Source: Octopus sinensis (lineage: Eukaryota). Taken from it: a stretch of DNA of 64,000 nucleotides. The position numbers and the translations under genes were made by a program. Position 1 is the stretch's first letter. Every line of letters begins with the position of its first letter. The notes under the pieces were generated by a model. The model ran no database searches. It was given only the letters and a program-made list of their open reading frames with translations, and was not told the DNA's origin. The stretch lies in contig NC_043023.1 in assembly GCF_006345805.1 (NCBI RefSeq), forward strand, positions 5,704,001 through 5,768,000, given 5' to 3'. Shown here one piece after another: positions 8,418 through 57,778 of this stretch.

Positions 8418-9009
8418 CTGAGAAAAATGATAAAAACAACAGTTAAAATTTAGCAAAGGAAGTTCTTAAAATGCACCCAACAACAACAACAACAATAATG
8501 ATAATAATAATAATCATTCCTACCATAAGTACAAGGCCTAAATTTTGTACCGTCAATTACATCAACCCCTATACTCAACTGGTACTTAATTTATTGACCC
8601 CAAAAAATATGAAAGGCCAAGTCAATGTCGGTGGAATTCCTTTCTACTATAGGCACAAGGCCTCAAGTTTTGTAACGTTGGTTACATTGACCTCAGTGCA
8701 TAACTGGTACTTATTTCATCAACCATGAATGGATGAAAGGCAAAGTCAACCCCTGCAGAATTTGAACTCAGAATGTGAAGATGGACAGAAAACCGCTAAG
8801 TATTTCACCTGGTGTGCTAACAATTCTGCCAGCCCATTGCCTTAATAATAATGATAATAATAATAATAATGATAATAATAATAATAATAATAATGATAAT
8901 AATAATAATAATAATAATAATGATAATAATAATATTAATAATAATAATGATAATAATAATAATAATGATAATAATAATAATAATAGGAAAGCAAAATATT
9001 TGCTATTGA

Positions 9010-9900
9010 TCTCGTGCAGGATACCCAAACTGAACAACCCGAGGGAAGTACGGCAACTATTGTTGCAAAGAAGGTGAAAATGATGGCAATGAAAAAAGCG
9101 CACGAGCAATTGGCTGATAGGTGGGAGGAGAAACCTCTGCACGGCAAATATGTTGATGTTGACCAGAAGCAAACCCATCAGTGGCTACGGAGCTCAGGGC
9201 TAAAAGCAGAGAGCGAAGGTTTCATCCTGGCTGCTCAAGATCAAAGCCTATTAACCCGGAACTACCAGGCCAATGTGATGAAAAATGGAGCAGACCCAAA
9301 ATGCCGATTCTGCAACGACATGATTGAAACAGTGGACCACCTAATCTCTGGATGTAAAGTCTTAGCACCAGTGGAGTATAAATTAAGACATGACAGAGTT
9401 GGCCAATATCTACACTGGCTAATAAGTCGGCATTACAATATCAAAACTGCCGACAAGTGGTATAATCACCACCCTGAGGCTGTGGGACTTTCCAGTACAT
9501 ACAGACCGAACCATCAAGGCCAATAAACCAGATATTGTTCTTAAAGACCAAAACAATAAAGTTTGCTTATTGATCGACATGAGCATCCCCTGTGATCATA
9601 ATATCTCAGCGAAAGAGTTTGACAAGCTCAGAAAATATAAAGACCTACTCATTGAAATTGAGAAAATGTGGCATCTCAAGGCGGTTACAATACCAGTGAT
9701 CGTAGGAGCACTAGGAATGATCAAGAAGGGAACCGAAAATTATATGAAAATGATCCCTGGCTTACCATCCCTGCAAGAAGTGCAAAAGATTGTCTTAACT
9801 GGTACATCACACGTATTGAGAAGAGCATTGTCGATGTGAGAACTGTTGCTGCTCATGTATTTTAATTTAACTTTAAAAAAAAAAAAAAAAAAAAAAAAAT
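9010..9900 (+). mobile_element. 5'-truncated R4/Dong-clade non-LTR retrotransposon (zinc knuckle + restriction-like endonuclease) inserted in (TAA)n
   Basis: ORF pieces ..GFILAAQDQSL..CRFC..ETVDHLISGC..RHDRV.., NKPDIVL, IDMSIPCDHN, K..KYKDL, VIVGALG, ending in poly(A); flanked by long (AAT)n at 8845-8985 and 10020-10155. Confidence 0.85.
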
Positions 9901-11526: not shown

Positions 11527-11628
11527 CCGCCATCAGTTTGACCAGTACGTGATCCAGCTGGCCGTGGAGGTGGTGGTGGTGGAGTGTCTGCCGTGTACTG
11601 TTGTTGTAGGGAGCCACTGGGTCCTTGA
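11527..11628 (-). CDS. Syn: Synapsin exon 11 (Pro-rich D region): (S)QGPSGSLQQQYTADTPPPPPPRPAGSRTGQTDG(G)
   Basis: Acceptor TCTCTACTACAG|T, donor GG|GTAAGT, 102 nt, phase 2 at both ends, open in the required frame. Confidence 0.88.
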
Positions 11629-15853: not shown

Positions 15854-15963
15854 CTCATTCCTGGTTTGCAGTAAATCTGCATTTTCTGCAGCACCATCTC
15901 AGAGATGAGGCGTCGGTCCTCCTCTTGAGTCTCCCCTAACAGAACCATTGATGAGTCGTTTAC
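15854..15963 (-). CDS. Syn: Synapsin exon 10: VNDSSMVLLGETQEEDRRLISEMVLQKMQIYCKPGM(S)
   Basis: Acceptor CTAATTACAG|GTA, donor AG|GTAAGT, 110 nt; end of the C domain. Confidence 0.96.
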
Positions 15964-17136: not shown

Positions 17137-17239
17137 CTCAATGACATATTCACGGCCATCTTTACCCTGCAGGGCTTCCACAGCTACAATATCCAGACCT
17201 CCAAACATTTGGCTGCACTCATCAACCCACAGCTTATAT
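17137..17239 (-). CDS. Syn: Synapsin exon 9: (R)[34 protein letters not shown]
   Basis: Acceptor GTATTACAG|A, donor GAG|GTAAGA, 103 nt. Confidence 0.97.
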
Positions 17240-17690: not shown

Positions 17691-18419
17691 AATCTTACTG
17701 AATGAAAACCCCTCTATAGCCCCTAACTTAGCAGTTTACATATGTAAAAGAAAAAGGGTAGGGTTTGACAGGGGTTTATGTATCTATGGATGTGAACGTA
17801 ACTTTATTTGATGAAAGGGGACAGGCACTGTGACATGGGGTCTGGTAGGTCTGACATAACTGTCTCTGACCCCATGACATACTGTTTGTCCCCTTTGTAT
17901 TGGAGTAAGTGATAGAAAGGGGACTAGTAGTGTGCCATGGGGTCAGAGAGGTTTGAAATAACAGAACCCTAATGGACCCTATTACTATTGTGATAGGAAA
18001 AGGACAAGTATGCCATGGGTTCAGAGAGGTCTGACATAACAGAACCCTTAACATAAAGGTGGTTGGGTCAAAAAGAGGTGGGTGTGGAAAAAGGAGAAGG
18101 GGTGAAAGATGAAAGGTGGGGTGGAGCAAAAGAGAAGGAGAGGGACAAGAAGAAATGGAGTGAGACTAAAAGAGGTAGAGTGGGGGAAAGAAAGGAGAAG
18201 TGGAGTGAGGCAATGGAGAAGGTGGGGCAAAGAGAAGCAGGGTGGGAGATGGAAAGTATGGGTGTGGAAAAACAAGGAGGAGTTAAGAAGAGGTGGAGGC
18301 AAAGCAAGAAGATGTAGCTGGGGGCAGAGTATTCCACTAATATTGTCTTTTTGGGGTGAATGAGGGATGATCAGGTATTTGTCAGTTTGGGAGCCTGTGC
18401 CCAAACAAATAGTGTGTGT

Positions 18420-18985
18420 CATCATTATCATTGTTCGACCGTGGTCGAGACAATGGAATTTACCATGCTACGCCAGACTTCACGGTCCATCATGGCATTA
18501 CGGAGGTCCTGTTGCTGGATGCCTGTATCCCTGGAGATTACATCAGGGTAGGAGAGTGTGTGCCCTCTGGTATTGCGAGTAGATGGCTTCCAGAGGAGAA
18601 GAGTAGAAATTACTTCTTTTTCAGCTCTACAACAATGTCCAGCAAACTGGACTCTCCTACCTTTCACAAGAGATGACACTGGTGGTAGTTTCCCATATAT
18701 TTGCATTTTGGTTGGATGGCGCTTCCACGAGAGATTTTGAGCTCTCATAAGGAGGCGAGTGTAGGCTCCATCCAACCGCCTCTCAAGCTTCTTTGATAAC
18801 GTCCAGGTTTCTGAGCCATATAGTAGAATTGGTTCAACTGTGGCTTTGAAGATTTCAAGTTTAAGTCTCTACTTAGATTTGATGACCAGATCTTATGCAT
18901 ATCATTGCAGGCTGACCAGGCCATACTCTTTCTAGTTAGAAAGTCTTTTCCAGATATGTATGACCCAAGATATTTGAAATAAGTG
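18420..18985 (-). mobile_element. RTE-clade LINE 3' fragment with (TGA)n tail
   Basis: DGAYTRLLMRAQNLSW..RRVQFAGHCCR..; a near-identical copy lies at 35062-35455. Confidence 0.85.
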
Positions 18986-19050: not shown

Positions 19051-19125
19051 CTGTCATTCATAGCTATCTGTTCCAGCATTGCTGACCCGGTGTTGGCTTT
19101 CCAGTTTCCTGATATGGATTTGCGG
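19051..19125 (-). CDS. Syn: Synapsin exon 8: (I)[24 protein letters not shown](R)
   Basis: Acceptor CTATTTTACAG|C, donor AG|GTGAGT, 75 nt. Confidence 0.97.
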
Positions 19126-19544
19126 CTGTAAAATAGAAAAATTAAAAAGAATGAGGGTGTGTGTGTGTGTGTGTGTTTGTCATCCCACCACTGTTATGCA
19201 AAGACACACACACATACACATATATACAACGGACTTCTTCCAGTTTCCATCTACCAAATCCACTCACAAGGCTTTGGTCTACCCAAAGCTATAGTAGAAG
19301 ACACTTGCCCAAGGTGCCATGCAGTGGAACTGAACCCAGAACCATGTGGTTGAGAAGCAAGTTTCTAACCCCACAGCCACACCTACTCCATGCAGGTAAC
19401 TGCTGATTGTCTTAGATTATCTCCCCCTTTTCCTTCTGAATCAGCTGCAATTGCTGCTAGGTTCTTGTTTCCTTTCTCTTGAAGCAAAGGAAACTGCAGT
19501 TGATCAAGAATTTATCTTGCATGGTATTTAGTACACCCTTGTGT

Positions 19545-20500
19545 TGTCTCTCTCTCTCTCTTTCTCCCTTTTTCTCTCTCAATTTATTCCTCTCTCTCTG
19601 CCTCCCTTTCTCCCTCTTTCCCTCTACTCTTCTTCTCTTGCTCTCTCCATCTTTCTCTCTCTCTCTTTCTTTCTCTCTCTATATCTCTCCATTTCCATCC
19701 CCTTCTCTCTTCCTGTCTTTCTTGCTCCATCTCTCTATCTCCCCTTCAAAATCCATCTACTCTCTTTCTCTTGTCGTCTCTCTCCATCTTTCTCTCTCTC
19801 CCTTGTTGTCTCTCTCCATCTCTCTCTCATCATACCTCTCCATTTCCCTCTCTTCTTCTCTTCCTCTCCCTCTACTAGTCTCTCTCATGTTTCTCTCCCC
19901 ATCTCTTCCTTTCTCTGTTTCTCTACTCTTTCTCTCTCACTCTATCTCTTTTTTGCTATCTCACTCTCTCTATATCTCTCTCTCTTGTTCCATCTCTTCA
20001 TCTCTCTCTCCCCATCTCTTTTCTCTCTCTCTTTCATTCCATCTCTCTCGCTCTCTTTACTCTCTCTCCAGCCTCCTCTCCTTTCTCTTTCTTTATCTCT
20101 TCCTCCCCCTCTCTACTCTGTCTCATTCTCCCCCTCTCTATTCTCATTCTCCTCCTCTCTATTCTCATTCTCCCCCTCTCTACTCTGTCTCTTCCTCCCC
20201 TCTCTAATCTGTCTCATTCTCCCACTCTCTTTCTATCTTCTCTATCTTGTCCCCTCTCTTTCTATCTCTCTCTACTCCCTCTCCATCTCATCCTCTCTAC
20301 CTCTCTCTCGCCTCATCTCTCTCTACTCTTTCTCTTTTCCACCCTTCTCTCTCTCACCCCATCTCTTCTGCCCCCTCTCCCCTCTCTATTCTTCCTCTCC
20401 TCTCTCCCTCTACTCCTTTCTCTCACTCCATCTCTCTACACTTTCTCTCCTGCTCTCTTCTTCTCCCCATCTCCCCTCTCTCCGTCCTCCTCCTCACTCT
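19545..20500. repeat. ~950-bp CT-rich low-complexity tract directly downstream of the exon 7 donor
   Basis: Almost purely pyrimidine on the + strand. Confidence 0.9.
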
Positions 20501-20506
20501 ACTTAC

Positions 20507-20649
20507 ATGAATGCCTTGTAATTGTTGCCTATCTTCTGCACACGGATGTCGTACTTGCAGTCAATGAATGGCTCTGTGGTGGCATACGTCTTGGTCACAG
20601 CCACGACACTGGAGATGTCTTGGAAGGCATGATGGTGGTCGATCTTCAC
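20507..20649 (-). CDS. Syn: Synapsin exon 7: [47 protein letters not shown](I)
   Basis: Acceptor TATTTGCAG|GTG, donor AT|GTAAGT, 143 nt. Confidence 0.97.
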
Positions 20650-31253: not shown

Positions 31254-31818
31254 ATGTAATATACATGTGTGTATGTGTGTGTCTGTGTGTGTATTCTGCA
31301 AACATTTTTAGATGCAATACAAGGGTACATCATTGTGCCATATGACATGTCTTGGTGGAGTTCGTCCTCATCTTTGTCTGGTCTGGTCTCCAGGCATAGA
31401 GACACACAGACAGACAGACATACAGAAGGAAGGAAAGAGTGAGAGAAAGTGTAGAGTGACTGGTATTTTAATTTTATTGACCCAGAAATGACAAAAGGCA
31501 ATGTAGACCTCAGCATGGTTTGAACTCAGACATCTCTGCTGACAGGCTACTTAGACTGGTCCCAGATGCATGTCTGAACCAAAGTTTTTTGAAAGTAGTG
31601 GGGTGTGGTTTGACGTTATCTGAATGTGTGTGTGTGTGTGTGTGAGGGAAGGGGGCATCTTCATCTAGAACCTCTAAATTTTTGGATGCTATCTGCAACG
31701 TTTAGTCTAACGATGAACTAACGATGAACTAACGATGAACTAACAGAAGTACAGTTTCCAAAGCAAATGAAAGGGGACAGGCAAAGGATCAAGAATAACT
31801 CACCCAAAGATTACTCAC

Positions 31819-31908
31819 CATTTCCTTGTGGTTTGGATAATACGCTTGGTCGATCAATGGGAACTTGTCCGGTCCAAGTTTCTTTTGGATCTGGATTAAG
31901 TGTGCCAT
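31819..31908 (-). CDS. Syn: Synapsin exon 5: MAHLIQIQKKLGPDKFPLIDQAYYPNHKEM
   Basis: Acceptor CTCTCCCCACAG|ATG, donor ATG|GTGAGT, 90 nt. Confidence 0.97.
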
Positions 31909-32139
31909 CTGTGGGGAGAGAGGGGCAGTGAGAGAGAAAGAGAGAGAGAGAGAGAGGGGAAGAAGAGGAGGAGGGAAATACAGAGAGAAGGGAGAAGGAT
32001 GTGGGAGAGAAAGGGTGACGGTGTACAAGTGAGAGGGAGGGAGTTTTATGGATGGCTAGATGATGTGTTAGACTGACAAAATCTGGTTGATTGGAAGATA
32101 TATTTATAGACACAGATGAGTAATTTTCTAAATAGATCA

Positions 32140-32332
32140 ACAGATAGGTAGACAGGCAGACAGACAGGTAGCTAGATAGATAGATAGGGAGAGAAAGAGA
32201 GAGAGAAAGATAGACAGAGAGATAGACACACAACAGATAAATTGATAGGCAGAAAGGTAGATAGATAAGTAGATAGACAGATAGACAGAAAGAGAAAAAT
32301 GACAGTCAGATATATGATTCCACATATATACA

Positions 32333-32368
<36 letters not shown>

Positions 32369-32376
32369 TGTATGTG

Positions 32377-32407
<31 letters not shown>

Positions 32408-32509
32408 ATATATATATATATAGATAGATAGATAGATAGATATAAAGATAGATAGACAGATACATGCATAAAGACAGACAGACAGACAAACAGATAGATA
32501 GATATATAA

Positions 32510-32585
<76 letters not shown>

Positions 32586-32733
32586 GTAAGTAGATAGATA
32601 GATATATAAACAGATAGATAAATAGATAGATAGATAGACACATAGATAGATAGACAGACAGACAGATAGATAGATAGACAGACAGACAGATAAGATAGAT
32701 ATATAAATTAGTAGATAGATAGATAGATAGATG

Positions 32734-32790
<57 letters not shown>

Positions 32791-32864
32791 GTAAGTAGAT
32801 AGATAGATATATAAACAGATAGATAGATAAATAGATAGATAGATAGACACATAGATAGATAGAC

Positions 32865-32911
<47 letters not shown>

Positions 32912-32977
32912 TAAGATAGATATATAAATTAGTAGATAGATAGATAGATAGATGGATAGATAGATAGATAGATAGAT

Positions 32978-33030
<53 letters not shown>
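32140..33030. repeat. ~890-bp (AGAT)n/(AGAC)n compound microsatellite with an internal ~220-bp duplication
   Basis: The interruptions GGTAAGTAGAT..TAAACAGAT and ATAAATTAGTAGAT each occur twice. Confidence 0.9.
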
Positions 33031-33083
33031 CAGCTGGAGAGGAAAAGAAATGTTTCAGGGAGGCAGTAGAGAATTTGACTTAC

Positions 33084-33234
33084 CACCCAAGGTTTATCTT
33101 GAAAGTTGTAAATGGAATCCATAGAATTAATACTAGGAACACCGCCATAATGGAACCCCATGATCAAGTTACGCCAGTCCTCACAAGCGTCACGCACATG
33201 TTGTCTGACGAGCACAAAGTCTGGCTTGAAAGAC
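33084..33234 (-). CDS. Syn: Synapsin exon 4: (R)SFKPDFVLVRQHVRDACEDWRNLIMGFHYGGVPSINSMDSIYNFQDKPWV
   Basis: Acceptor CTCTGTGCAG|G, donor GTG|GTAAGT, 151 nt. Confidence 0.97.
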
Positions 33235-34595: not shown

Positions 34596-35061
34596 TAGAT
34601 ATATGTAATTATTACTATGTTGTTGTTTGTAATGGACTGTTAAGTCCAAAAATTGAAAAGTTGTAAAAGTTGTAAGAGGTTTAATACCTCGTTTTGTGTT
34701 TGGTTTTAAAGAACAATGTTTTAGAGAAGCAGAAGTCCAGCCCACAAAGCTACTTTACTCTATGTACAGCCTTTATGGCAAATATAATGAAATAAAGAGG
34801 CTTGCTTCCCAACCACATGGTTCTGGGTTCAGTTCCTCTGCAAAGCACCTTGGACAAGTGTTTTCTACTATAGCTTCAGGCTGACAAAAAACTTGTGAGA
34901 GGATTTGGGAGATGGAAACTGAAAGAAGCTTGTTGTATGTACACATATATATGTTTGTGAGTCTTTGTGTCTGTGTTTGTCCACCCCACTATTGGTTGAC
35001 AACTGGTGCTGGTGTGTTAACGTCTCTGTAACTTAGTGCTTCAGAAAAAGTGACCAACATC

Positions 35062-35455
35062 ATCATCATCATTGTTCGACCGTGGTCGAGACAATGGAAT
35101 TTACCATGCTATGCCAGACTTCATGGTCCATCATGGCATTACGGAGATCCTGTTGCTGGATGCCTGTATCCCTGGAGATTACATCAGAGTAGGAGAGTGT
35201 GCGCCCTCTGGTATTGCGAGTAGGTGGCTTCCAGAGGAGAAGAGTAGAAATTACTTCTTTTTCAGCTCTACAACAATGTCCAGCAAACTGGACTCTCCTA
35301 CCTTTCACAAGAGATGACACAGGTGGTAGCTTCCCATATATTTGTACTTTGGTTGGATGACGCTTCCACGAGAGATTTTGAGCTCTCATAAGGAGGCGAG
35401 CGTAGGTTCCATCCAACTGCCTCTCAAGCTTCTTTGATAGCGTCCAGGTTTCTGA
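35062..35455 (-). mobile_element. RTE-clade LINE 3' fragment, same family as 18420-18985
   Basis: ORF 35069-35416 is nearly identical to ORF 18428-18775. Confidence 0.88.
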
Positions 35456-36518
35456 ATAGGTACCAGGCTTGTAAAAAATATAAGCACCGGGATGGGGGTG
35501 GCGGGGTGATACATTTAACTAAAAAGTCTTCCAAGCAGTGCCCCAGCATGGCCACAGTCATATGTCTGAAGCAAGTAAAAGGTAAAAGACATGGAGTAAC
35601 TCTACATTAAGCCCTGGAATGTGCAACTTCCTGCAAGTCAGACTTCCTCAAGGCCCCAGCAGACAAAATGGAAAAGGTGATGCCCCAGAATATGGCAAGG
35701 AATATGTGTTTGAACAGCCACTCAGACTCACAGGGGTCACACTTGCGAACAACATCTCTGTCCTGGAAATGGTAAGCAGGGGTACACTCTGGGGGCCAAG
35801 ACACCAGAGGTCTCCACTGCCACAGGCTCAACTATAAACTTGTCAGAGAGCAAATATGGTCTGGGGGCCAAGAACGCTAGGGGTTTCCACTGTTACAGGC
35901 TGGCGCTTTATATCAAACATTTGTTTATTGTTTTGGTAAAACAAGCAATTGGTTGTTTGTCAAAGACCTTATGCCAATATCTTGCAACCTCATCAAGGAC
36001 ACGTCTCCTCCCTTCAAGGTCTGCCTTAAACAAACAGTTGATTAGTTGGTTAGATTGACTAACCAATTGACTAACAATAAAGAAAGGATATTGAACTCAT
36101 TTCTACAGCTGAGTGAACTGGAGCAATGTGAAATAAATTGTCTTGCTCAAGAACACAATATGCAGACCAGTCCGGGATTTGAACTCACAATCTCATGATT
36201 GTAAGCTCGTTGCTCTAACCATTGAGCTATGCACCTTGTACAGCAAGTTTCTTCTTTAAGTTTTTGTCTTCTAAATCCACTCACAAGGCTTTGGTCAGTT
36301 TAAGGAAACGTAGGGTTCCACAAGGTGGGATTGAACCCAAAACCATGTGGTTGGGCAGCACACTTCTAACCACACAACCACACCAGCACCTCATCATAAT
36401 GATCAATTGGAAATAAATCTGATTTGCTCCTGTAACCTGGGGCAAATAATACCACCACCACCACCACCACCACCACCATCATGAACAAGAACAGTAGAGT
36501 ACAAGCAGTGCCACCTAC

Positions 36519-36610
36519 CTGACAACTCTGGTGCCATTCCGCAATACTTGAATGTCGACCATGGTCCCTTGGTCTGTGTAGGCAGCAACATTGATTTCAG
36601 GAAACTCTGC
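36519..36610 (-). CDS. Syn: Synapsin exon 3: AEFPEINVAAYTDQGTMVDIQVLRNGTRVV(R)
   Basis: Acceptor CCCTTCCAG|GCA, donor AG|GTAGGT, 92 nt. Confidence 0.96.
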
Positions 36611-38212: not shown

Positions 38213-38270
38213 CTGCTCTATGCGTATGTCCCAGTCACCAAATAGCTTCTTACCGCGGAAATATTTCGAC
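38213..38270 (-). CDS. Syn: Synapsin exon 2: (W)SKYFRGKKLFGDWDIRIEQ
   Basis: Acceptor TTGACAG|G, donor CAG|GTGAGT, 58 nt, phases match neighbours. Confidence 0.96.
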
Positions 38271-44463: not shown

Positions 44464-47289
44464 TATATATATATATATAAAGAGAAAAGAAGTGTATAAC
44501 CACGCAAGAAAGTATATAGGAGAATTTGTTTTGGGGTTTGAAATCGTAATTGTTAATATCACCCAAAATAACTGAACTTTCAATCATGTATGACTGTTAC
44601 GAAAATCATTGAACATTTGAACTTGTATTGATGTCTATCTCTGCGGAACTCCTTGGAACTTGTATGAATATTTGATTATTTAAGTATGTTTTTCTGAATT
44701 TTCCCTTGTAACTTTAATCTTTTGTAAACCCATTTCAAGTTATTTTTCTATTTTAACATTGATAAACAAAAATAGTTGAAACCGGTTTGGTATTTTAATA
44801 AATCTGTAATGAAAGTTAAAGCTGACTACGAGTTTTGATATTTGAGTCCCAAAACAAATTCTCCTATATATGCTATAAAAATATATACATATAAATATTC
44901 ACACACACACACACATGCACACATCTGTATATATTTATGATATCCATGCAATATAAAATACATGCAAGATACATGCAAATATACATAGAAATACTCACAA
45001 ATGTATATACATACACACATTTAGTCATGTGTATGTGCCCACCCATCCACCCCTGTTGGCCATGATATGTGACAGAGGCTGGGACACACCTTTTAGCATC
45101 AGTAAGGCAGTGCCACCTGACAGGTGATGGTGATTCATCTCCCTTGAAGAGAAACAGACAAAGACATACTTCCCAGCACAAGTCAGCTTCTCGTCAGGGG
45201 GCGCTGGAGTGCAGACTTAAACCAAATGCCAGAGTGAGGAGATGATGGTTTCGTAACTTGGTGGCCCCCATGCTTACATATATTCTTACAGTGATAGTGG
45301 TGATGGTGATGGCGATACCAAAGTGGGCATAACTGATGGTGGAGTATGGTCCTGTATGGGGTTGCTAAGTATACTAGAAATAACAGCTGAAATTTTGAAA
45401 TGAGAAATTCAACTTTTCTTTGGGTAATTTTCATTACTAACTACAAATCATGATTTTGAACTTTTCTCACTCAGACTTATCAGATTGAGAAAATAATGGA
45501 TTTCTTCACACTTCTTTGTAGCTGTGAATATTATTTTTACCAAACATTTCACTCAAGAAAAAATATTTGTCTGAAAAATTTGGCAAAATTTGAACATTTC
45601 TAGTGAATCATTTAGAAAATTTTGAAGTGAAAAATTCAATTTTCTTTGGCTATTTTCCTTACTAACTATAAATAGTGATTTTAATGCTTCAAATTATATC
45701 TTTCCATTAAAAAAATATAAGAGGCTGCTTCCCAACCATCTGGTTCCAGGTTCAGTCCTACTGTGTGGCACCATGGGCAAGTGTCTTCTACTATAGCCTT
45801 GGGCTGACCAAAGCCTTGAGAGTAGATTTGGTAGGTGGAAATTGAAAGAAGCCCCTCATATATATATGTATATATCTATGTGTGTGTCTGTGTTTGCCTC
45901 CCACCCCACCCACCCATTCACCACTTGACAACTGGTGTTGGTGTGTTTACCTACCCAAAACTTAGCAGTTTGGCAAAAAAACCCGATAGAATAAGTACCA
46001 GGCTTAAAAAGTAAGTACTGGGGTGATTCATTTGACTAAAAGTTCAAGGTGGTGCCCCAGAATGACCGCAGTCTATGTACTAAAAGAGGTGAAAGATAAA
46101 AGATAGAAGATATATGCTATACTAATACTTCACTCTTGTTGCCTGTCTGTTGATTCCCAAGAGCATCTAAGATTTGAATGTTGTTGAAACCACCAGATAG
46201 AGTGGTACTGCCTAAGTGTCAAAACCATAGTGACATCAGTTAGGCAGCTGAGGATGGTAATGTATATTTGATATTTGAAATGCTTGTTTATGAACTTTTT
46301 ATATCTTGGTGTCCCATTGATCTAAGCTGAAATTGCGAGGATAATCTGGTACTTGACTGAAGATAGAAAACTTCAAATGACCCATCCTTGTTTTATTTGT
46401 ATCGTCTGTCTGGATGTTTTGTTGTTGTCCCTTTTTGTATCACCTAACTGTCTGGATGTTTTGCATTCTTGTCCCATCTGGTATTTTATATATATATATG
46501 TGTGTGTATATATACTATATATATATATATATATCCATTATATGCAATAGAATCAGTATATATGTATGCACACACATACATGCAAACATACAGATATACA
46601 TACAGGCATATATATATATATATATAATGTATGTATGACTGCATGTATCTACTTTTGAAAATGTAAGGATTCATATAAGGCAATGGAAGGGCCTCTTTGA
46701 GGTCATTTAATCTGCTAGAAATAGCAGTCTATAAGGCGGCGAGCTGGCAAAAACGTTAGCACACCAGCTTAGCGGCATTTCATGTTATTACATTCTGAGT
46801 TCAAATTTCACTGAGGTCGATTTTGCCTTTCATCCTTTTGGGGTCAATAAATTAAGTACCAGTTGTGCATTGGGGTCGATATAATCGACTTAATCCCTTT
46901 GTCTGTCCTTGTTTGTCTTTTCTATGTCTAGCCCCTTGTGGGCAATAAAGAAATAAGAAATAGCAGTCTAATTTTTCTCAAATCACACATTAATGTCTTC
47001 CAAAACAAGAAGACCGAGTGAGGATGAGCACATATTAAATTATGTAGTCTTAGATACACTGTGCCTGATTTAAAAGAAATGGGCCAGGCCTCTGCTGGAG
47101 CATCTCTTGATCATAGCTCTGCCAGATTGGTGCCTGGACTGACCAAGTGACCATCACCACCATCACTGCTGCTGCTACTACTACTACTACTACTACTACT
47201 ACAAATAACAAAAAGATATAAAACATATAAAAAATCCCTCCACCCCACCCCTATAAAATAATCCCAAGGAACAAAAATAGGGGCCTTAC

Positions 47290-47570
47290 CAGTCGGTGTG
47301 GGGATCGTCAATGACAAGGAGGGTCTTACATCGGTCCTTGTTGACATTTGACCTCTGACCTGAGAATATGCCCTTGGCAATCCCGACCGCGCTGGTCTTC
47401 GATGGGGAACTGGGCGCACTCGGCGAAGGCCCCTTCCGTATCGGAAGCACGGGGACCTGGCCTTGCTCTTGGGCATCACGTAGCTCGCCCTGGAGGTCAC
47501 CTGAGCTGAAGCGTCTCCGGAGGAAGCTGACTCCCGTCGAGAAGTTGTCCTTGAATGTTGAGAACGAAAT
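47290..47570 (-). CDS. Syn: Synapsin coding exon 1 (domains A, B, start of C): ISFSTFKDNFSTGVSFLRRRFSSGDLQGE...KDRCKTLLVIDDPHTD(W); 5' end uncertain, no ATG
   Basis: Translation of the minus strand; donor TG|GTAAG at 47290/47289; in-frame TAA at 47595-47597 upstream. The 3' boundary is firm; the 5' boundary is placed at the ATT codon by inference. Confidence 0.9.
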
Positions 47571-48723
47571 TTTGACGGGTTTTGTTGGAACGATTTAAGG
47601 GAAAAAATGAGAAAGACTTTTGGAGAGAGAAAAAAAAGGAAGGAAGAGGGGAAAGAATTGTTTGTTTTGTTGTTTTTCTTTTTGTTAAATATGAGACAGA
47701 CAGACAGAGAAAGGAAAGAAATGGAAGGATGACCTTTTTTAAAAAAAATTGAAGGAGGATTGTAGAAGGCCCCTGAAGAAGTAAGTTTTGATCTTTTGTT
47801 TTTTAAATAAAAGAGAAATGATGGAGAAAATTGGAGCCAAAAGATGTCCAGAAGAAGGAATCAGGCGTTTTCTGTATCTTTTTAGATGAAAGATTGAAGA
47901 GCTAAAGGCATAGGTGAAGGAGAGGAGGAGAAGGTGAAGAATGTAGAGAAAGAAGGAGGGAGTTATAATAGTGGCAGTAGGAGGAGAAGAGAAAGTAGGA
48001 GGTGAAAATTAGAGAGGAGGAGAATTTGGAGAAAGGAGGAAAGAGTAAAGGGTAGGAGGTGCAAAGCAAGAGGAGAGAGGGAAAGAGTAGGAGATTGTGG
48101 GTGTGGCTAGGTAGGAAGCAAGGAGGGAGGAGGGTGGTAAGGAGGTAGATAGGTAGGTAGATAAAGAGAGCGGTGGGAGGAGCAACAGGGAAGAAGTGTG
48201 AGGGGGAGAGAAAGAGGGTGAAGTAGGAAGACTTTGAAAGGTTAAGAGTGAAAGAAGAAGGAACTTGAACAGGAATTGTTAAACCGATTCTTTGTTGATA
48301 GAGAGGTTATTGTAGTTCAGGCTCTTGTTGCATTCACAGGTCCTTAGCTGTTGAGTTTTTCCCTTCTTTTTTAGCAACCATACACACAGATATATGTATA
48401 TATAATTTTATATATACATATATATGTATATATATCTATGCGTCTTTCGTTCTTTGACAGCCCTTTTTCTCTCTCTCTCTGTTAAATTCTTCTTTCACTC
48501 TTTCTTTCTATCCACCTTCACTCTCTGCCTCTGTATGTATGTATCTCTCTCTTTGTGTTTATCTCTCTCCCTCTCTCTCTCTCTTTCAATTTCTGTCTTC
48601 CTTGGTTGTGGTTACAATCTGGTGTAAATCCAATCTTCAGCTACAGCAGCGCCACCTAGAATCAAAGAAAAGAAAAAGAAATGAAGATAAGATAATAATC
48701 TATTGCAATACACAAACATGCAA

Positions 48724-57678: not shown

Positions 57679-57778
57679 NNNNNNNNNNNNNNNNNNNNNN
57701 NNNNNNNNNNNNNNNNNNNNNNNNNNNNNNNNNNNNNNNNNNNNNNNNNNNNNNNNNNNNNNNNNNNNNNNNNNNNNN
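57679..57778. other. Assembly gap (100 N)
   Basis: Run of N. Confidence 1.

What the first reader, a model, noticed from the sequence alone, without database searches (positions are those of the whole stretch)
47526..47597. Synapsin appears to start at a non-AUG (AUU) codon
Seen in sequence: the frame reads TAA ATC GTT CCA ACA AAA CCC GTC AAA ATT TCG TTC TCA ACA TTC AAG.. with no ATG until exon 3. There is no AG between the stop and the ATT, so no upstream exon can splice in ahead of SFSTFK. The ATT (47568-47570) sits in CAAA-ATT, the invertebrate consensus start context. The Met expected before xFLRRRFS in vertebrate/gastropod synapsins is GTC (Val). From memory, Drosophila synapsin initiates at CUG with an N-terminus like LNFSSFKSSFTSNVNFLKRRFSSGDL, which aligns gap-free with ISFSTFKDNFSTGVSFLRRRFSSGDL and puts CUG and AUU at the same position. 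Inference: a conserved near-cognate initiation site in protostome synapsins, likely to be mis-annotated by gene finders. Alternatives are ACG at 47535-47537 (+4 G), an unseen ATG exon joining at 47549, 47530 or 47526, or a single-base assembly error.
Basis: partly seen in the sequence, partly recalled or inferred. Interest (0 to 1): 0.85.

Follow-up and report, generated by a model that had tools for sequence, protein, structure and literature searches.

The report
Octopus synapsin starts at AUU codon
The octopus gene for synapsin, a major nerve-terminal protein, has no ordinary ATG start codon and most likely begins at an ATT codon; a non-ATG start was already published for octopus in 2019, but with a different codon, and this ATT turns out to be conserved across molluscs, a spider and other invertebrates.

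Summary
On the minus strand, exon 1 of a complete 12-exon synapsin gene reads TAA ATC GTT CCA ACA AAA CCC GTC AAA ATT TCG TTC. There is no in-frame ATG before exon 3 (residue 130) and no AG between the stop and the ATT.

A non-AUG start for this gene is already published. Maiole et al. 2019 (PMC6817820) reported it for Octopus vulgaris and O. bimaculoides, but named the ATC right after the stop as the initiator.
- At that position, 31 of 31 distinct Ile-bearing sequences use ATT, never ATC or ATA. They come from octopods, a snail, bivalve-like contigs, a spider and unnamed invertebrate contigs.
- Other Ile codons in the same exons are only 23% ATT.
- The only alternative at that position is ATG (Aplysia cDNA, Elysia, Nucella, Batillaria, one metagenomic lineage).
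- The CAAA-ATT-TC context is nearly invariant.
- Fourteen distinct sequences have an in-frame stop three codons upstream.
- The published ATC is CGG in Argonauta.

Four insects carry CTG at the same position, which matches the newer fly numbering (S22). No direct evidence of initiation exists yet. The phenomenon is known; the choice of codon and its deep conservation appear to be new.

The parts
47595..47597 (-). In-frame stop codon TAA, nine codons upstream of the ATT; it closes the reading frame upstream
   Evidence: The same stop is shown in O. vulgaris cDNA clones and O. bimaculoides exon 1 in PMC6817820 suppl. 1.
47592..47594 (-). ATC, the Ile codon named as 'predicted initiator' in the 2019 paper; rival start site
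   Evidence: Fig. 1 legend of PMC6817820. Context ccttaaATCg has T at -3. The codon is CGG in Argonauta.
47571..47585 (-). Conserved 15-nt initiation context ACAAAACCCGTCAAA (-15 to -1), with C at -4 and A at -3
   Evidence: 14 of 15 bases identical in Argonauta, while the next three 15-nt bins upstream match at 3/15, 0/15 and 2/15. CAAA or CAAG precedes the ATT in nearly all ATT carriers.
47568..47570 (-). ATT, the proposed AUU start codon of synapsin (codon 1; probably decoded as Met by initiator tRNA)
   Evidence: ATT in 31 of 31 distinct homologous sequences, ATG in the other 19, no other codon. Control Ile codons are 23% ATT. Aplysia, Elysia, Nucella and Batillaria have Met here.
47290..47570 (-). 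Coding part of exon 1 (domains A and B and the start of C), ending ...HTDW with donor CGACTG|gtaagg
   Evidence: Against Argonauta, the first 38 codons are 20 identical, 18 synonymous and 0 nonsynonymous.
47529..47531 (-). GTC (Val14) at the position of the second, conventional Met of MNFLRRRFS in most molluscs and of the vertebrate start
   Evidence: Also Val in Argonauta, the Loligo cDNA, Nucella, L004 and the ISYSSF-type contigs.
47535..47537 (-). ACG (Thr12), a minor rival near-cognate start with G at +4 and T at -3
   Evidence: The residue is Ser in most other taxa.
47474..47476 (-). First ATG downstream of the ATT. It is out of frame (+94, frame +1) and opens a 79-codon ORF running into exon 2, so ribosomes that scan past the AUU would start here.
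   Evidence: An ATG lies at the same offset in Argonauta and L002.
47760..47779 (-). Site of published RT-PCR primer 218F; marks at least about 190 nt of 5' leader colinear with the genome in O. vulgaris cDNA clones
   Evidence: This amplicon (218F/219R) does not cross an intron.
47569..47588 (-). Site of published RT-PCR primer 200F (CCAACAAAACCCGTCAAAAT), which ends on the AT of the ATT. With primer 201R in exon 7 the product crosses six introns.
38213..38270 (-). Exon 2 (SKYFRGKKLFGDWDIRIEQ); no Met
36519..36610 (-). Exon 3; contains the first in-frame ATG (36562-36560, residue 130)
33084..33234 (-). Exon 4
31804..31908 (-). Exon 5 (31908-31819) plus the alternative 15-nt extension 31818-31804, which encodes VSNLW (the Syn8.2 isoform)
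   Evidence: PMC6817820
23248..23310 (-). Exon 6
20507..20649 (-). Exon 7 (carries the primer 201R site)
19051..19125 (-). Exon 8
17137..17239 (-). Exon 9
15854..15963 (-). Exon 10
11527..11628 (-). Exon 11 (102 nt; skipped in the published short isoform)
   Evidence: PMC6817820
8147..8417 (-). Exon 12, ending ...NLRKTFAGIFGDM plus the stop codon (domain E)

Best explanation
The window carries the complete synapsin gene of an Octopus species; exon 1 matches the printed O. bimaculoides exon 1.

Shown or strongly supported:
- The mRNA has no AUG that could begin a protein containing the conserved domain A.
- Comparative evidence points to the AUU at 47570-47568 as the place where scanning ribosomes most likely start. 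It sits in the context C(-4)A(-3)AA-AUU-UC.

Inferred from general knowledge of near-cognate initiation:
- The AUU is read by initiator Met-tRNA, giving M-SFSTFKDNFSTGVSFLRRRFSS, probably trimmed and acetylated to Ac-SFSTFK.
- Ribosomes that scan past the AUU would meet an out-of-frame AUG 94 nt downstream.
- Synapsin output would therefore depend on how strictly the start codon is selected (eIF1/eIF5-type control). That last step is speculation.

The AUU and its context look ancestral to protostome synapsins. Lineages with an AUG at this exact position, or with a second in-frame AUG 13 codons downstream, are the variants.
For: 1. The frame is closed by TAA nine codons upstream. No AG lies between the stop and the ATT, and there is no in-frame ATG until residue 130 in exon 3.
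2. Exon 1 is translated from codon 1 onward. Octopus versus Argonauta shows 18 synonymous and 0 nonsynonymous differences in the first 38 codons.
3. Similarity between Octopus and Argonauta begins abruptly at -15: 14/15 identical, then 3/15, 0/15 and 2/15. The published ATC and the TAA are not conserved there; they are CGG and ACC.
4. Seventeen codons upstream of (K/R)RRFS, 50 distinct sequences carry either ATT (31) or ATG (19) and nothing else. ATT carriers include Octopus, Argonauta, Bulinus, the spider Trichonephila, bivalve-like contigs and unnamed invertebrate contigs, forming at least 11 clusters.
5. In those same sequences the other Ile codons of exon 1 are ATT 22, ATC 55 and ATA 18. 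The invariant Ile of LLxID is ATT 8, ATC 16 and ATA 3.
6. A at -3 occurs in 31 of 31 ATT carriers, and AAA or AAG precedes the ATT in 30 of 31. ATG carriers have a variable context.
7. Fourteen distinct ATT sequences (TAA at codon -4 in twelve, TGA in L013, TAA in L063 and L080 among them) have an in-frame stop only three codons upstream. In the ISYSSF-type contigs no AG lies between the stop and the ATT, and there is no downstream Met.
8. Aplysia cDNA AAK83050, Elysia, Nucella (which also has Val downstream) and Batillaria start with Met at exactly this position.
9. The Loligo pealei cDNA AAC24823 is colinear through ..QTAKISFSGFRDNFSTGV.. and has no Met.
10. Published RT-PCR with primer 200F (47588-47569) and a reverse primer in exon 7 crosses six introns. 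The mature mRNA therefore contains the sequence immediately upstream of the ATT.
11. The same ATT appears in the O. bimaculoides genome and in O. vulgaris cDNA clones, which excludes an assembly error.
Against: - There is no direct evidence here or in the literature I could read: no initiation-site ribosome profiling, N-terminal peptide or mutagenesis.
- AUU is usually a weak near-cognate codon, yet synapsin is abundant.
- The +4 base is U. In mammalian screens, non-AUG initiation depends strongly on G at +4 (PMC9082881).
- No stabilising RNA structure was detected downstream (z = 0.36).
- Bivalve-like and insect sequences conserve in-frame sequence upstream of this codon. There the codon may be internal, so the ATT conservation could partly reflect some other nucleotide-level constraint.
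- Most metagenomic sequences are unnamed, and many are close relatives of one another.
- The 2019 paper names ATC instead.
Confidence: 0.78

Rival explanations
1. Translation starts at the ATC (47594-47592) immediately after the in-frame stop, as stated in Maiole et al. 2019, giving a protein that begins (M)VPTKPVKISFSTFK.
For: ATC is a near-cognate codon and the first codon after the TAA. It has G at +4 and is the published 'predicted initiator'. TKPVK is the same in Argonauta.
Against: - It has T at -3.
- The codon is CGG in Argonauta, and similarity between the two octopods stops at -15, downstream of this codon.
- The paper's only argument is the upstream stop.
- In many other taxa a stop lies three codons before the ATT, so no equivalent upstream start can exist there.
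Confidence: 0.08
2. An unseen upstream exon carrying an ATG is spliced to the AG at 47549 (or 47530 or 47526). ISFSTFK would then be intron or alternative 5' UTR, and the protein would start conventionally.
For: AG dinucleotides occur at those places, and a fairly pyrimidine-rich stretch precedes 47549. The Argonauta gene model starts exactly at DNFSTGV. Insects do have an intron shortly upstream of the homologous codon.
Against: - ISFSTFK is conserved as protein across phyla and is annotated coding sequence in Aplysia cDNA.
- The Loligo cDNA is colinear through it.
- Published RT-PCR from primer 200F to exon 7 shows spliced mRNA containing the sequence just upstream of the ATT.
- The Argonauta model is flagged partial, meaning no ATG exon was found.
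Confidence: 0.04
3. Initiation occurs at more than one near-cognate codon (AUU plus ACG at 47537-47535 and/or AUC), giving a mixture of N-termini.
For: ACG has G at +4 and is present in Octopus, Argonauta and L002. Multiple minor non-AUG sites are common on mRNAs of this kind (PMC9082881).
Against: ACG has T at -3, and the residue is Ser (not ACG) in most taxa. Only the ATT is conserved.
Confidence: 0.07
4. The ATT is a sequencing or assembly error for ATG, or RNA editing turns it into AUG.
For: ATT and ATG differ by one base, and cephalopods edit many neuronal mRNAs (general knowledge).
Against: The same ATT appears in the O. bimaculoides genome, in O. vulgaris cDNA chromatograms from two tissues, in Argonauta and in 28 other distinct sequences. 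A-to-I editing cannot change U to G. There is no in-frame AUA between the stop and domain A.
Confidence: 0.01
5. Only the first in-frame AUG (residue 130, exon 3) is used, and the protein lacks domains A and B.
For: It is the first in-frame AUG.
Against: Exon 1 is under strong purifying selection at the protein level (0 nonsynonymous versus 18 synonymous differences). It carries the conserved RRFS kinase site. An out-of-frame AUG at +94 would intercept scanning ribosomes first.
Confidence: 0.01

Closest known systems
Octopus vulgaris / O. bimaculoides synapsin as described by Maiole et al. 2019 (Sci Rep 9:15430, PMC6817820; KY768851-3, XP_014784838)
   Same: It is the same gene and the same exon 1 sequence, with the same conclusion that translation starts at a non-AUG isoleucine codon downstream of an in-frame stop. 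The 12 exons, the alternative exon 11 and the 15-nt VSNLW extension of exon 5 are all present in the window.
   Different: The paper names ATC, the codon right after the stop, as the initiator and argues only from the stop. The evidence here points to the ATT eight codons downstream. The paper also states that only mollusc synapsins have an unusual start, overlooking Drosophila.
Drosophila melanogaster Syn, listed by FlyBase with a CUG start (PMC4528330 Table S3; PMC1660579; PMC4749839)
   Same: It is a synapsin with no AUG upstream of domain A. A CTG with A at -3 sits at the position that aligns without gaps with the octopus ATT in four of four insects examined. The renumbering of the PKA site from S6 to S22 equals a start at that codon.
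   Different: - The codon is CUG, not AUU.
- Edman sequencing quoted in PMC1660579 gave an N-terminal Leu at LKRGFSS, 16 residues downstream.
- An intron splits the RRFS codons.
- Insects conserve an in-frame G-C-x-x-x-C-x-P stretch upstream, so the real fly start may lie further upstream.
Aplysia californica synapsin cDNA (AAK83050), with Elysia, Nucella and Batillaria gene models
   Same: They share the N-terminal peptide (M/I)SFSxF(K/R)xxFxxG preceding (M/V)xFLRRRFSS, and their start position is identical to the octopus ATT.
   Different: They have a normal ATG there. Most also keep the second Met, although Nucella has Val like octopus.
EIF4G2 (DAP5/NAT1), the textbook case of exclusive, conserved non-AUG (GUG) initiation (PMC9082881)
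   Same: The sole productive start is a near-cognate codon. The context is conserved, with C at -4 and A at -3. An out-of-frame AUG ORF lies shortly downstream.
   Different: It uses GUG with G at +4, whereas synapsin has AUU with U at +4. Initiation at the EIF4G2 GUG is demonstrated experimentally; here it is not.
TEAD1/TEF-1 AUU start and the AUU-initiated PTEN proteoform
   Same: Both are eukaryotic proteins initiated at AUU. The PTEN case is cited in PMC9082881. The TEAD1 case is from my own knowledge and was not checked here.
   Different: They are unrelated proteins. The PTEN AUU form is an extension that exists beside an AUG form.

Membership tests
Synapsin protein family | Synapsin pre-ATP-grasp domain (PF02078) followed by the ATP-grasp domain C (PF02750) | tested here: met
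   PF02078 E = 2.7e-48 (residues 77-178); PF02750 E = 2.2e-109 (residues 180-381)
Synapsin protein family | N-terminal domain A with the RRxS kinase site 1, and C-terminal domain E | tested here: met
   FLRRRFSSGDL in exon 1. The protein ends ..NLRKTFAGIFGDM. Both align with published synapsins. Pfam Synapsin_N did not reach E <= 0.01 on this protein, but homologues carry weak precomputed hits.
Genes with exclusive non-AUG (near-cognate) initiation | No in-frame AUG between an upstream in-frame stop and conserved coding sequence | tested here: met
   TAA lies nine codons upstream; the first in-frame ATG is residue 130
Genes with exclusive non-AUG (near-cognate) initiation | No splice acceptor through which an AUG-bearing exon could join upstream of the conserved coding sequence | tested here: met
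   No AG lies between the stop and the ATT. Published intron-spanning RT-PCR from a primer at -18..+2, and a colinear squid cDNA, agree. Rare non-AG acceptors were not excluded.
Genes with exclusive non-AUG (near-cognate) initiation | Near-cognate codon in a strong context (purine at -3, G at +4) | tested here: inconclusive
   C at -4 and A at -3 are present and conserved (31 of 31 have A at -3). The +4 base is U in 28 of 31; PMC9082881 stresses G at +4 for mammals.
Genes with exclusive non-AUG (near-cognate) initiation | Evolutionary conservation of the near-cognate codon itself and its flanks beyond what protein coding explains | tested here: met
   ATT in 31 of 31 sequences against 23% at control Ile codons. 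The codon exchanges only with ATG. The context is conserved even where a stop lies three codons upstream.
Genes with exclusive non-AUG (near-cognate) initiation | Direct demonstration of initiation (initiation-site ribosome profiling, N-terminal peptide, start-codon mutagenesis) | not testable with these tools
   No such data were found for cephalopods in the searchable library
Same start site as Drosophila Syn CUG | Near-cognate codon at the homologous alignment position | tested here: met
   CTG 17 codons before KRRFS in D. palustris, Carabus, Pararge and Culex, aligning without gaps with the octopus ATT. The S6-to-S22 renumbering is in PMC4749839.
Same start site as Drosophila Syn CUG | Experimentally determined fly N-terminus at that codon | tested here: inconclusive
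   PMC1660579 quotes Edman data giving Leu of L-K-R-G-F-S-S, 16 residues downstream. The source papers (Klagges 1996, Godenschwege 2004, Nuwal 2011, Niewalda 2015) could not be read.

The most novel reading that the evidence does not exclude
An AUU start codon in an almost invariant (G)CC-AAA-AUU-UC context is the ancestral start of protostome synapsins. It is kept in molluscs, chelicerates, other arthropod-like lineages and the unnamed ISYSSF-type invertebrates. It has been replaced several times by AUG, and replaced or supplemented by CUG in insects and possibly by an upstream GUG in bivalves. In lineages that lost the second Met (coleoid cephalopods, the spider, the ISYSSF-type contigs), a weak near-cognate codon is then the only way to make full-length synapsin. 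This suggests that production of a major synaptic-vesicle protein is tied to start-codon stringency. I found no report of this cross-phylum conservation in the searchable literature.
Probability: 0.6. Interest if true: 0.6.

Novelty: already known. Interest (0 to 1): 0.42.

Why it matters
For annotation: cephalopod, spider, insect and many mollusc synapsin models are truncated, flagged partial or given invented first exons because pipelines insist on ATG. Fixing the start at the conserved ATT or CTG restores the true N-terminus and consistent numbering of the PKA/CaMK site (S22).

For biology: genes whose only productive start is a near-cognate codon are few (EIF4G2 is the standard example). 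A deeply conserved AUU start in an abundant presynaptic protein would be a good natural model for how context compensates for a weak codon. It would also allow a test of whether neuronal control of start-codon stringency tunes synapsin levels.

For the octopus literature: the analysis corrects the published initiator from ATC to ATT and links the mollusc and Drosophila observations, which that paper treated as unrelated.

Tried and rejected
- RNA structure downstream of the AUU that might boost a weak start: folding 47600-47451 gave -34.9 kcal/mol and z = 0.36 against shuffles, so nothing special.
- ATG-free 5' leader as a signature: there is no ATG for 341 nt upstream (374 nt in Argonauta). 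However, the strand is G-poor, and shuffles give P(0) of about 0.06-0.34, so this is not evidence.
- A-to-I editing creating an AUG or removing the stop: impossible for AUU. There is no in-frame AUA, no in-frame upstream ATG within 800 nt, and several in-frame stops.
- Rfam scan of the whole window: no hits.
- Nested TIMP gene, as seen in insect Syn loci: not found by motif search or by tblastn with a crude translation of the Culex TIMP region. This was a weak test.
- Papers that could not be read: Klagges 1996 (PMC6579133) and Niewalda 2015 (PMC4429153).
- DNA look-ups for the Cryptotermes and Tribolium models failed.
- My first impression was that bivalves have an ATG-led extension. This was withdrawn because the 'M' in prokaryote-style ORF calls is GTG in the three loci whose DNA I could read.
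This was revised after finding the S22 renumbering.
Full report
**1. What is at the coordinates**

The feature lies on the minus strand. Read 5' to 3', positions 47597-47526 are TAA ATC GTT CCA ACA AAA CCC GTC AAA ATT TCG TTC TCA ACA TTC AAG GAC AAC TTC TCG ACG GGA GTC AGC. This translates as *IVPTKPVK-I-SFSTFKDNFSTGVS and continues FLRRRFSSGDLQGE...HTDW up to a gtaagg donor.

- There is no AG between the stop (47597-47595) and the ATT (47570-47568).
- The first AGs downstream would start an exon at 47549, 47530 or 47526.
- The codon that is Met in vertebrate and many mollusc synapsins (MNFLRRRFS) is GTC here (47531-47529).

**2. The gene**

A spliced alignment places a complete 12-exon synapsin gene in the window, with every intron GT-AG. 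The coding exons are 47570-47290, 38270-38213, 36610-36519, 33234-33084, 31908-31819, 23310-23248, 20649-20507, 19125-19051, 17239-17137, 15963-15854, 11628-11527 and 8417-8147. The product is 512 residues counted from the ATT and carries Pfam Synapsin and Synapsin_C. Exons 1 and 2 contain no in-frame ATG.

**3. It is already in the literature, with a different codon**

Maiole et al. 2019 (Sci Rep 9:15430, PMC6817820) cloned O. vulgaris synapsin and inspected the O. bimaculoides locus. [quoted passage not shown] Their Figure 1 legend names ATC as the predicted initiator.

Their supplement prints O. bimaculoides exon 1, which matches the window, and O. vulgaris cDNA that differs by Ser to Gly in GVGF. 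It also gives useful experimental facts:
- Primer 200F (CCAACAAAACCCGTCAAAAT) maps to 47588-47569, ending on the AT of the ATT.
- Its partner 201R maps to exon 7, so that cDNA product crosses six introns.
- Primer 218F maps to 47779-47760. Clones from it show the leader and the TAA colinear with the genome, although that amplicon spans no intron.

Their alignment file also shows two informative N-termini. The squid Loligo pealei cDNA AAC24823 begins FFFDLFFQTAKISFSGFRDNFSTGVGFLKRRF, with no Met and Val at the second position. The Aplysia cDNA AAK83050 begins MSFSNFKDSFGSGMNYLRRRF.

**4. Which codon? Octopus against Argonauta**

The Argonauta hians gene model is annotated 'partial' and begins at DNFSTGV. 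Its genomic DNA reads ...cgggtgagcACAAAACCAGTCAAA-ATT-TCGTTCTCAACCTTCAAG.
- From the ATT onward, the first 38 codons are 20 identical, 18 synonymous and 0 nonsynonymous. The stretch is therefore translated and under purifying selection from codon 1.
- Upstream, 14 of 15 bases are identical in -15..-1. Identity then falls to 3/15, 0/15 and 2/15.
- The Octopus TAA and ATC are ACC and CGG in Argonauta.

No near-cognate codon lies within the conserved 15 nt. The ATT is the only near-cognate codon shared by the two octopods upstream of domain A.

**5. Which codon? Wider comparison**

Protein searches returned many exon-1 reading frames from molluscs and other invertebrates with the pattern K-I-S-F-S-x-F-(K/R)-x-x-F-x-x-G-(M/V)-x-F-L-R-R-R-F-S-S. 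I fetched DNA for 90 loci and read the codon 17 codons upstream of (K/R)RRFS.

Among 50 distinct sequences that have this N-terminal peptide, the codon is ATT in 31 and ATG in 19, and nothing else. ATT carriers are:
- Octopus and Argonauta;
- an unnamed Logan contig (L002);
- the snail Bulinus truncatus;
- an ENA contig (L004);
- the spider Trichonephila clavata;
- three bivalve-like contigs;
- a large set of unnamed metagenome contigs (TAKISYSSFRDNISSGVNFLRRRF);
- several arthropod-like contigs.

Together they form at least 11 clusters at 80% nucleotide identity.

As a control, the other Ile codons of exon 1 in these same 31 sequences are ATT 22, ATC 55 and ATA 18. The invariant Ile of LLxID is ATT 8, ATC 16 and ATA 3. 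An ordinary Ile codon would not stay ATT in every lineage.

The flanks are also fixed. A at -3 occurs in 31 of 31 sequences, AAA or AAG at -1 in 30 of 31, and GCC at -2 in 22 of 31. The 19 ATG carriers have variable upstream sequence. This asymmetry is what one expects if a weak start codon needs its context and a strong one does not.

Fourteen distinct ATT sequences have an in-frame stop only three codons upstream: TAA ACC GCC AAA ATT in twelve, TGA in L013, TAA GCC GCC AAA ATT in L063 and TAA TCA GTC AAG ATT in L080. Most of them have Val at the second-Met position. In the ISYSSF-type contigs no AG lies between the stop and the ATT. In the arthropod-like L063 the stop overlaps a possible acceptor (cttaag|cc), so that case is weaker.

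Sequences without the extension (MMNYLKRRFSS) start at the downstream ATG. Annotated proteins of Elysia, Batillaria and Nucella (MSFSSFRENLSSGVTFLKRRF, with Val downstream like octopus), and the Aplysia cDNA, carry Met exactly where octopus has Ile.

**6. The Drosophila link**

- FlyBase lists Syn among genes with a CUG start (PMC4528330 Table S3).
- Diegelmann et al. [quoted passage not shown] That is the old numbering, with the PKA serine as S6.
- Kleber et al. 2016 (PMC4749839) refer to the same serines as S22 and S549, '(loc. cit. S6/S533)'. This is a shift of 16 residues, which is exactly the distance to the Leu of T-L-N-F-S-S-F-K.
- In genomic DNA of D. palustris, Carabus, Pararge and Culex, the codon that aligns without gaps with the octopus ATT is CTG in all four, with A at -3. 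The downstream Leu (the old start) is CTG only in the fly and TTG in the other three.

Which fly codon is really used remains open. Insects also conserve an in-frame G-C-x-x-x-C-x-P stretch upstream of the CTG. In the fly it lies in a separate exon but in frame, with ATT or ATA in good context further upstream.

**7. Mechanism proposed**

Shown:
- No AUG can open the domain-A reading frame.
- The frame is closed nine codons upstream.
- The mRNA is colinear there.
- The ATT and its context are under nucleotide-level constraint and exchange only with ATG.

Inferred:
- Scanning 43S complexes initiate at the AUU with Met-tRNAi (the general rule for near-cognate starts, PMC4528330), giving M-SFSTFK.
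- Ribosomes that scan past would next meet the out-of-frame AUG at 47476-47474, which opens a 79-codon ORF. An ATG sits at the same offset in Argonauta and L002.
- Leaky scanning therefore yields no synapsin, and output should be sensitive to start-codon stringency.

Points against high efficiency: the +4 base is U, although G at +4 is considered critical for non-AUG starts in mammals (PMC9082881), and no significant downstream hairpin was predicted.

**8. Rivals**

- ATC start (the published one): poor -3 base and not conserved.
- An ATG exon spliced in at 47549: contradicted by protein-level conservation of ISFSTFK, by the squid cDNA and by the intron-spanning RT-PCR.
- ACG or mixed starts: possible as minor events.
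- Sequencing error or RNA editing: excluded by independent genomes and cDNAs, and by the chemistry of A-to-I editing.
- Start at Met130: contradicted by selection on exon 1.

**9. Novelty and score**

Non-AUG initiation of octopus synapsin (2019) and of fly synapsin (1996-2006) is published, so the finding as stated is already known. Two things appear to be new, within the limits of the library I could search:
- The conserved codon is the ATT, not the ATC.
- This ATT and its CAAA context are shared by molluscs, a spider and several unnamed invertebrate lineages, alternate only with ATG, and align with the insect CTG.

That is a moderately interesting addition for translation-control and synapse biology and a practical fix for annotation. 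It still lacks any direct evidence of initiation.

Noticed in passing
window 47476-47474 (minus strand): The first AUG downstream of the proposed AUU start is out of frame (+94). It opens a 79-codon ORF that runs across the exon 1/2 junction. An ATG lies at the same offset in Argonauta and L002. It arises from the conserved R-D-(A/E) codons, so it may be only a by-product of protein conservation.
   Followed up: partly
L007, L008, L035 (bivalve-like contigs), 21-26 codons upstream of their ATT: All three conserve GTG GCN with A at -3 and G at +4 at the head of a conserved in-frame extension (..DLFxxxxFSSxxxxxxxK-I-SF). None has an in-frame ATG. The 'M' in the prokaryote-style ORF calls is this GTG. 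A GUG-initiated longer synapsin isoform in bivalves is possible.
   Followed up: partly
L006 (D. palustris) 3741 and 5384; L088 (Carabus) 1705; L089 (Pararge) 5372; L090 (Culex) 1974: Insects have CTG at the position of the octopus ATT. They also conserve an in-frame G-C-x-x-x-C-x-P stretch upstream. In the fly it sits in a separate upstream exon; in Carabus and Pararge it is in the same exon. Another Ile codon (ATT in the fly and Carabus, ATA in Pararge) lies in a GTC-A-N-N context still further upstream. The true insect start may therefore be upstream of the annotated CUG.
   Followed up: partly
L006 9338-10614, L088 8308-9059, L089 20712-21544, L090 5075-5835 (all opposite strand): A TIMP gene (PF00965) lies on the opposite strand just beyond the 3' end of each partial insect synapsin model examined; since the models are truncated it may sit within the full gene, which as I recall is the known Syn/TIMP nesting. 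A motif search and a crude tblastn found no TIMP in the octopus window.
   Followed up: partly
metagenome loci, e.g. L025 and L046 (Ga0056108), L011 and L048 (Ga0126335), L023 and L029 (Ga0209255): The same metagenome samples contain both an ATT-type synapsin exon 1 (TAKISYSSFRDNISSGVNF) and an ATG-type one (MALSSWRENFSSGVSF). They could be two paralogues in one host genome or two different animals. The organisms are not named in the records.
   Followed up: no
window 31818-31804 (minus strand): A second GT donor lies 15 nt after the exon 5 donor (GAAATG|gtgagtaatctttgg|gtgagt). Using it adds VSNLW, the published Syn8.2 isoform.
   Followed up: yes
window 18419-18868 and 35060-35518 (minus strand); 8987-9836 (plus strand): Two copies of a retrotransposon-like ORF fragment lie inside synapsin introns (96% identical over 396 nt; 93% at protein level). 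A third fragment has a weak zf-RVT match (E = 3.7e-4, below the Pfam cut-off).
   Followed up: partly
window 57679-57778: A run of exactly 100 N, which is an assembly gap.
   Followed up: no
window 47160-47210 and 32100-33050, 19500-20500: A (CTA/CTG)n microsatellite sits about 80 nt into intron 1. Long CT-rich and TCTA-type simple repeats fill several introns and create long spurious ORFs.
   Followed up: no
L005 (Trichonephila) 2327; P0061, P0134, P0138, P0146: Gene models in public databases handle this start in inconsistent ways. The spider model has a 3-aa 'MGG' first exon. Three Drosophila models graft unrelated N-termini onto ..RFSSGDL. The Argonauta, Cryptotermes and Ctenocephalides models are flagged partial.
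   Followed up: partly
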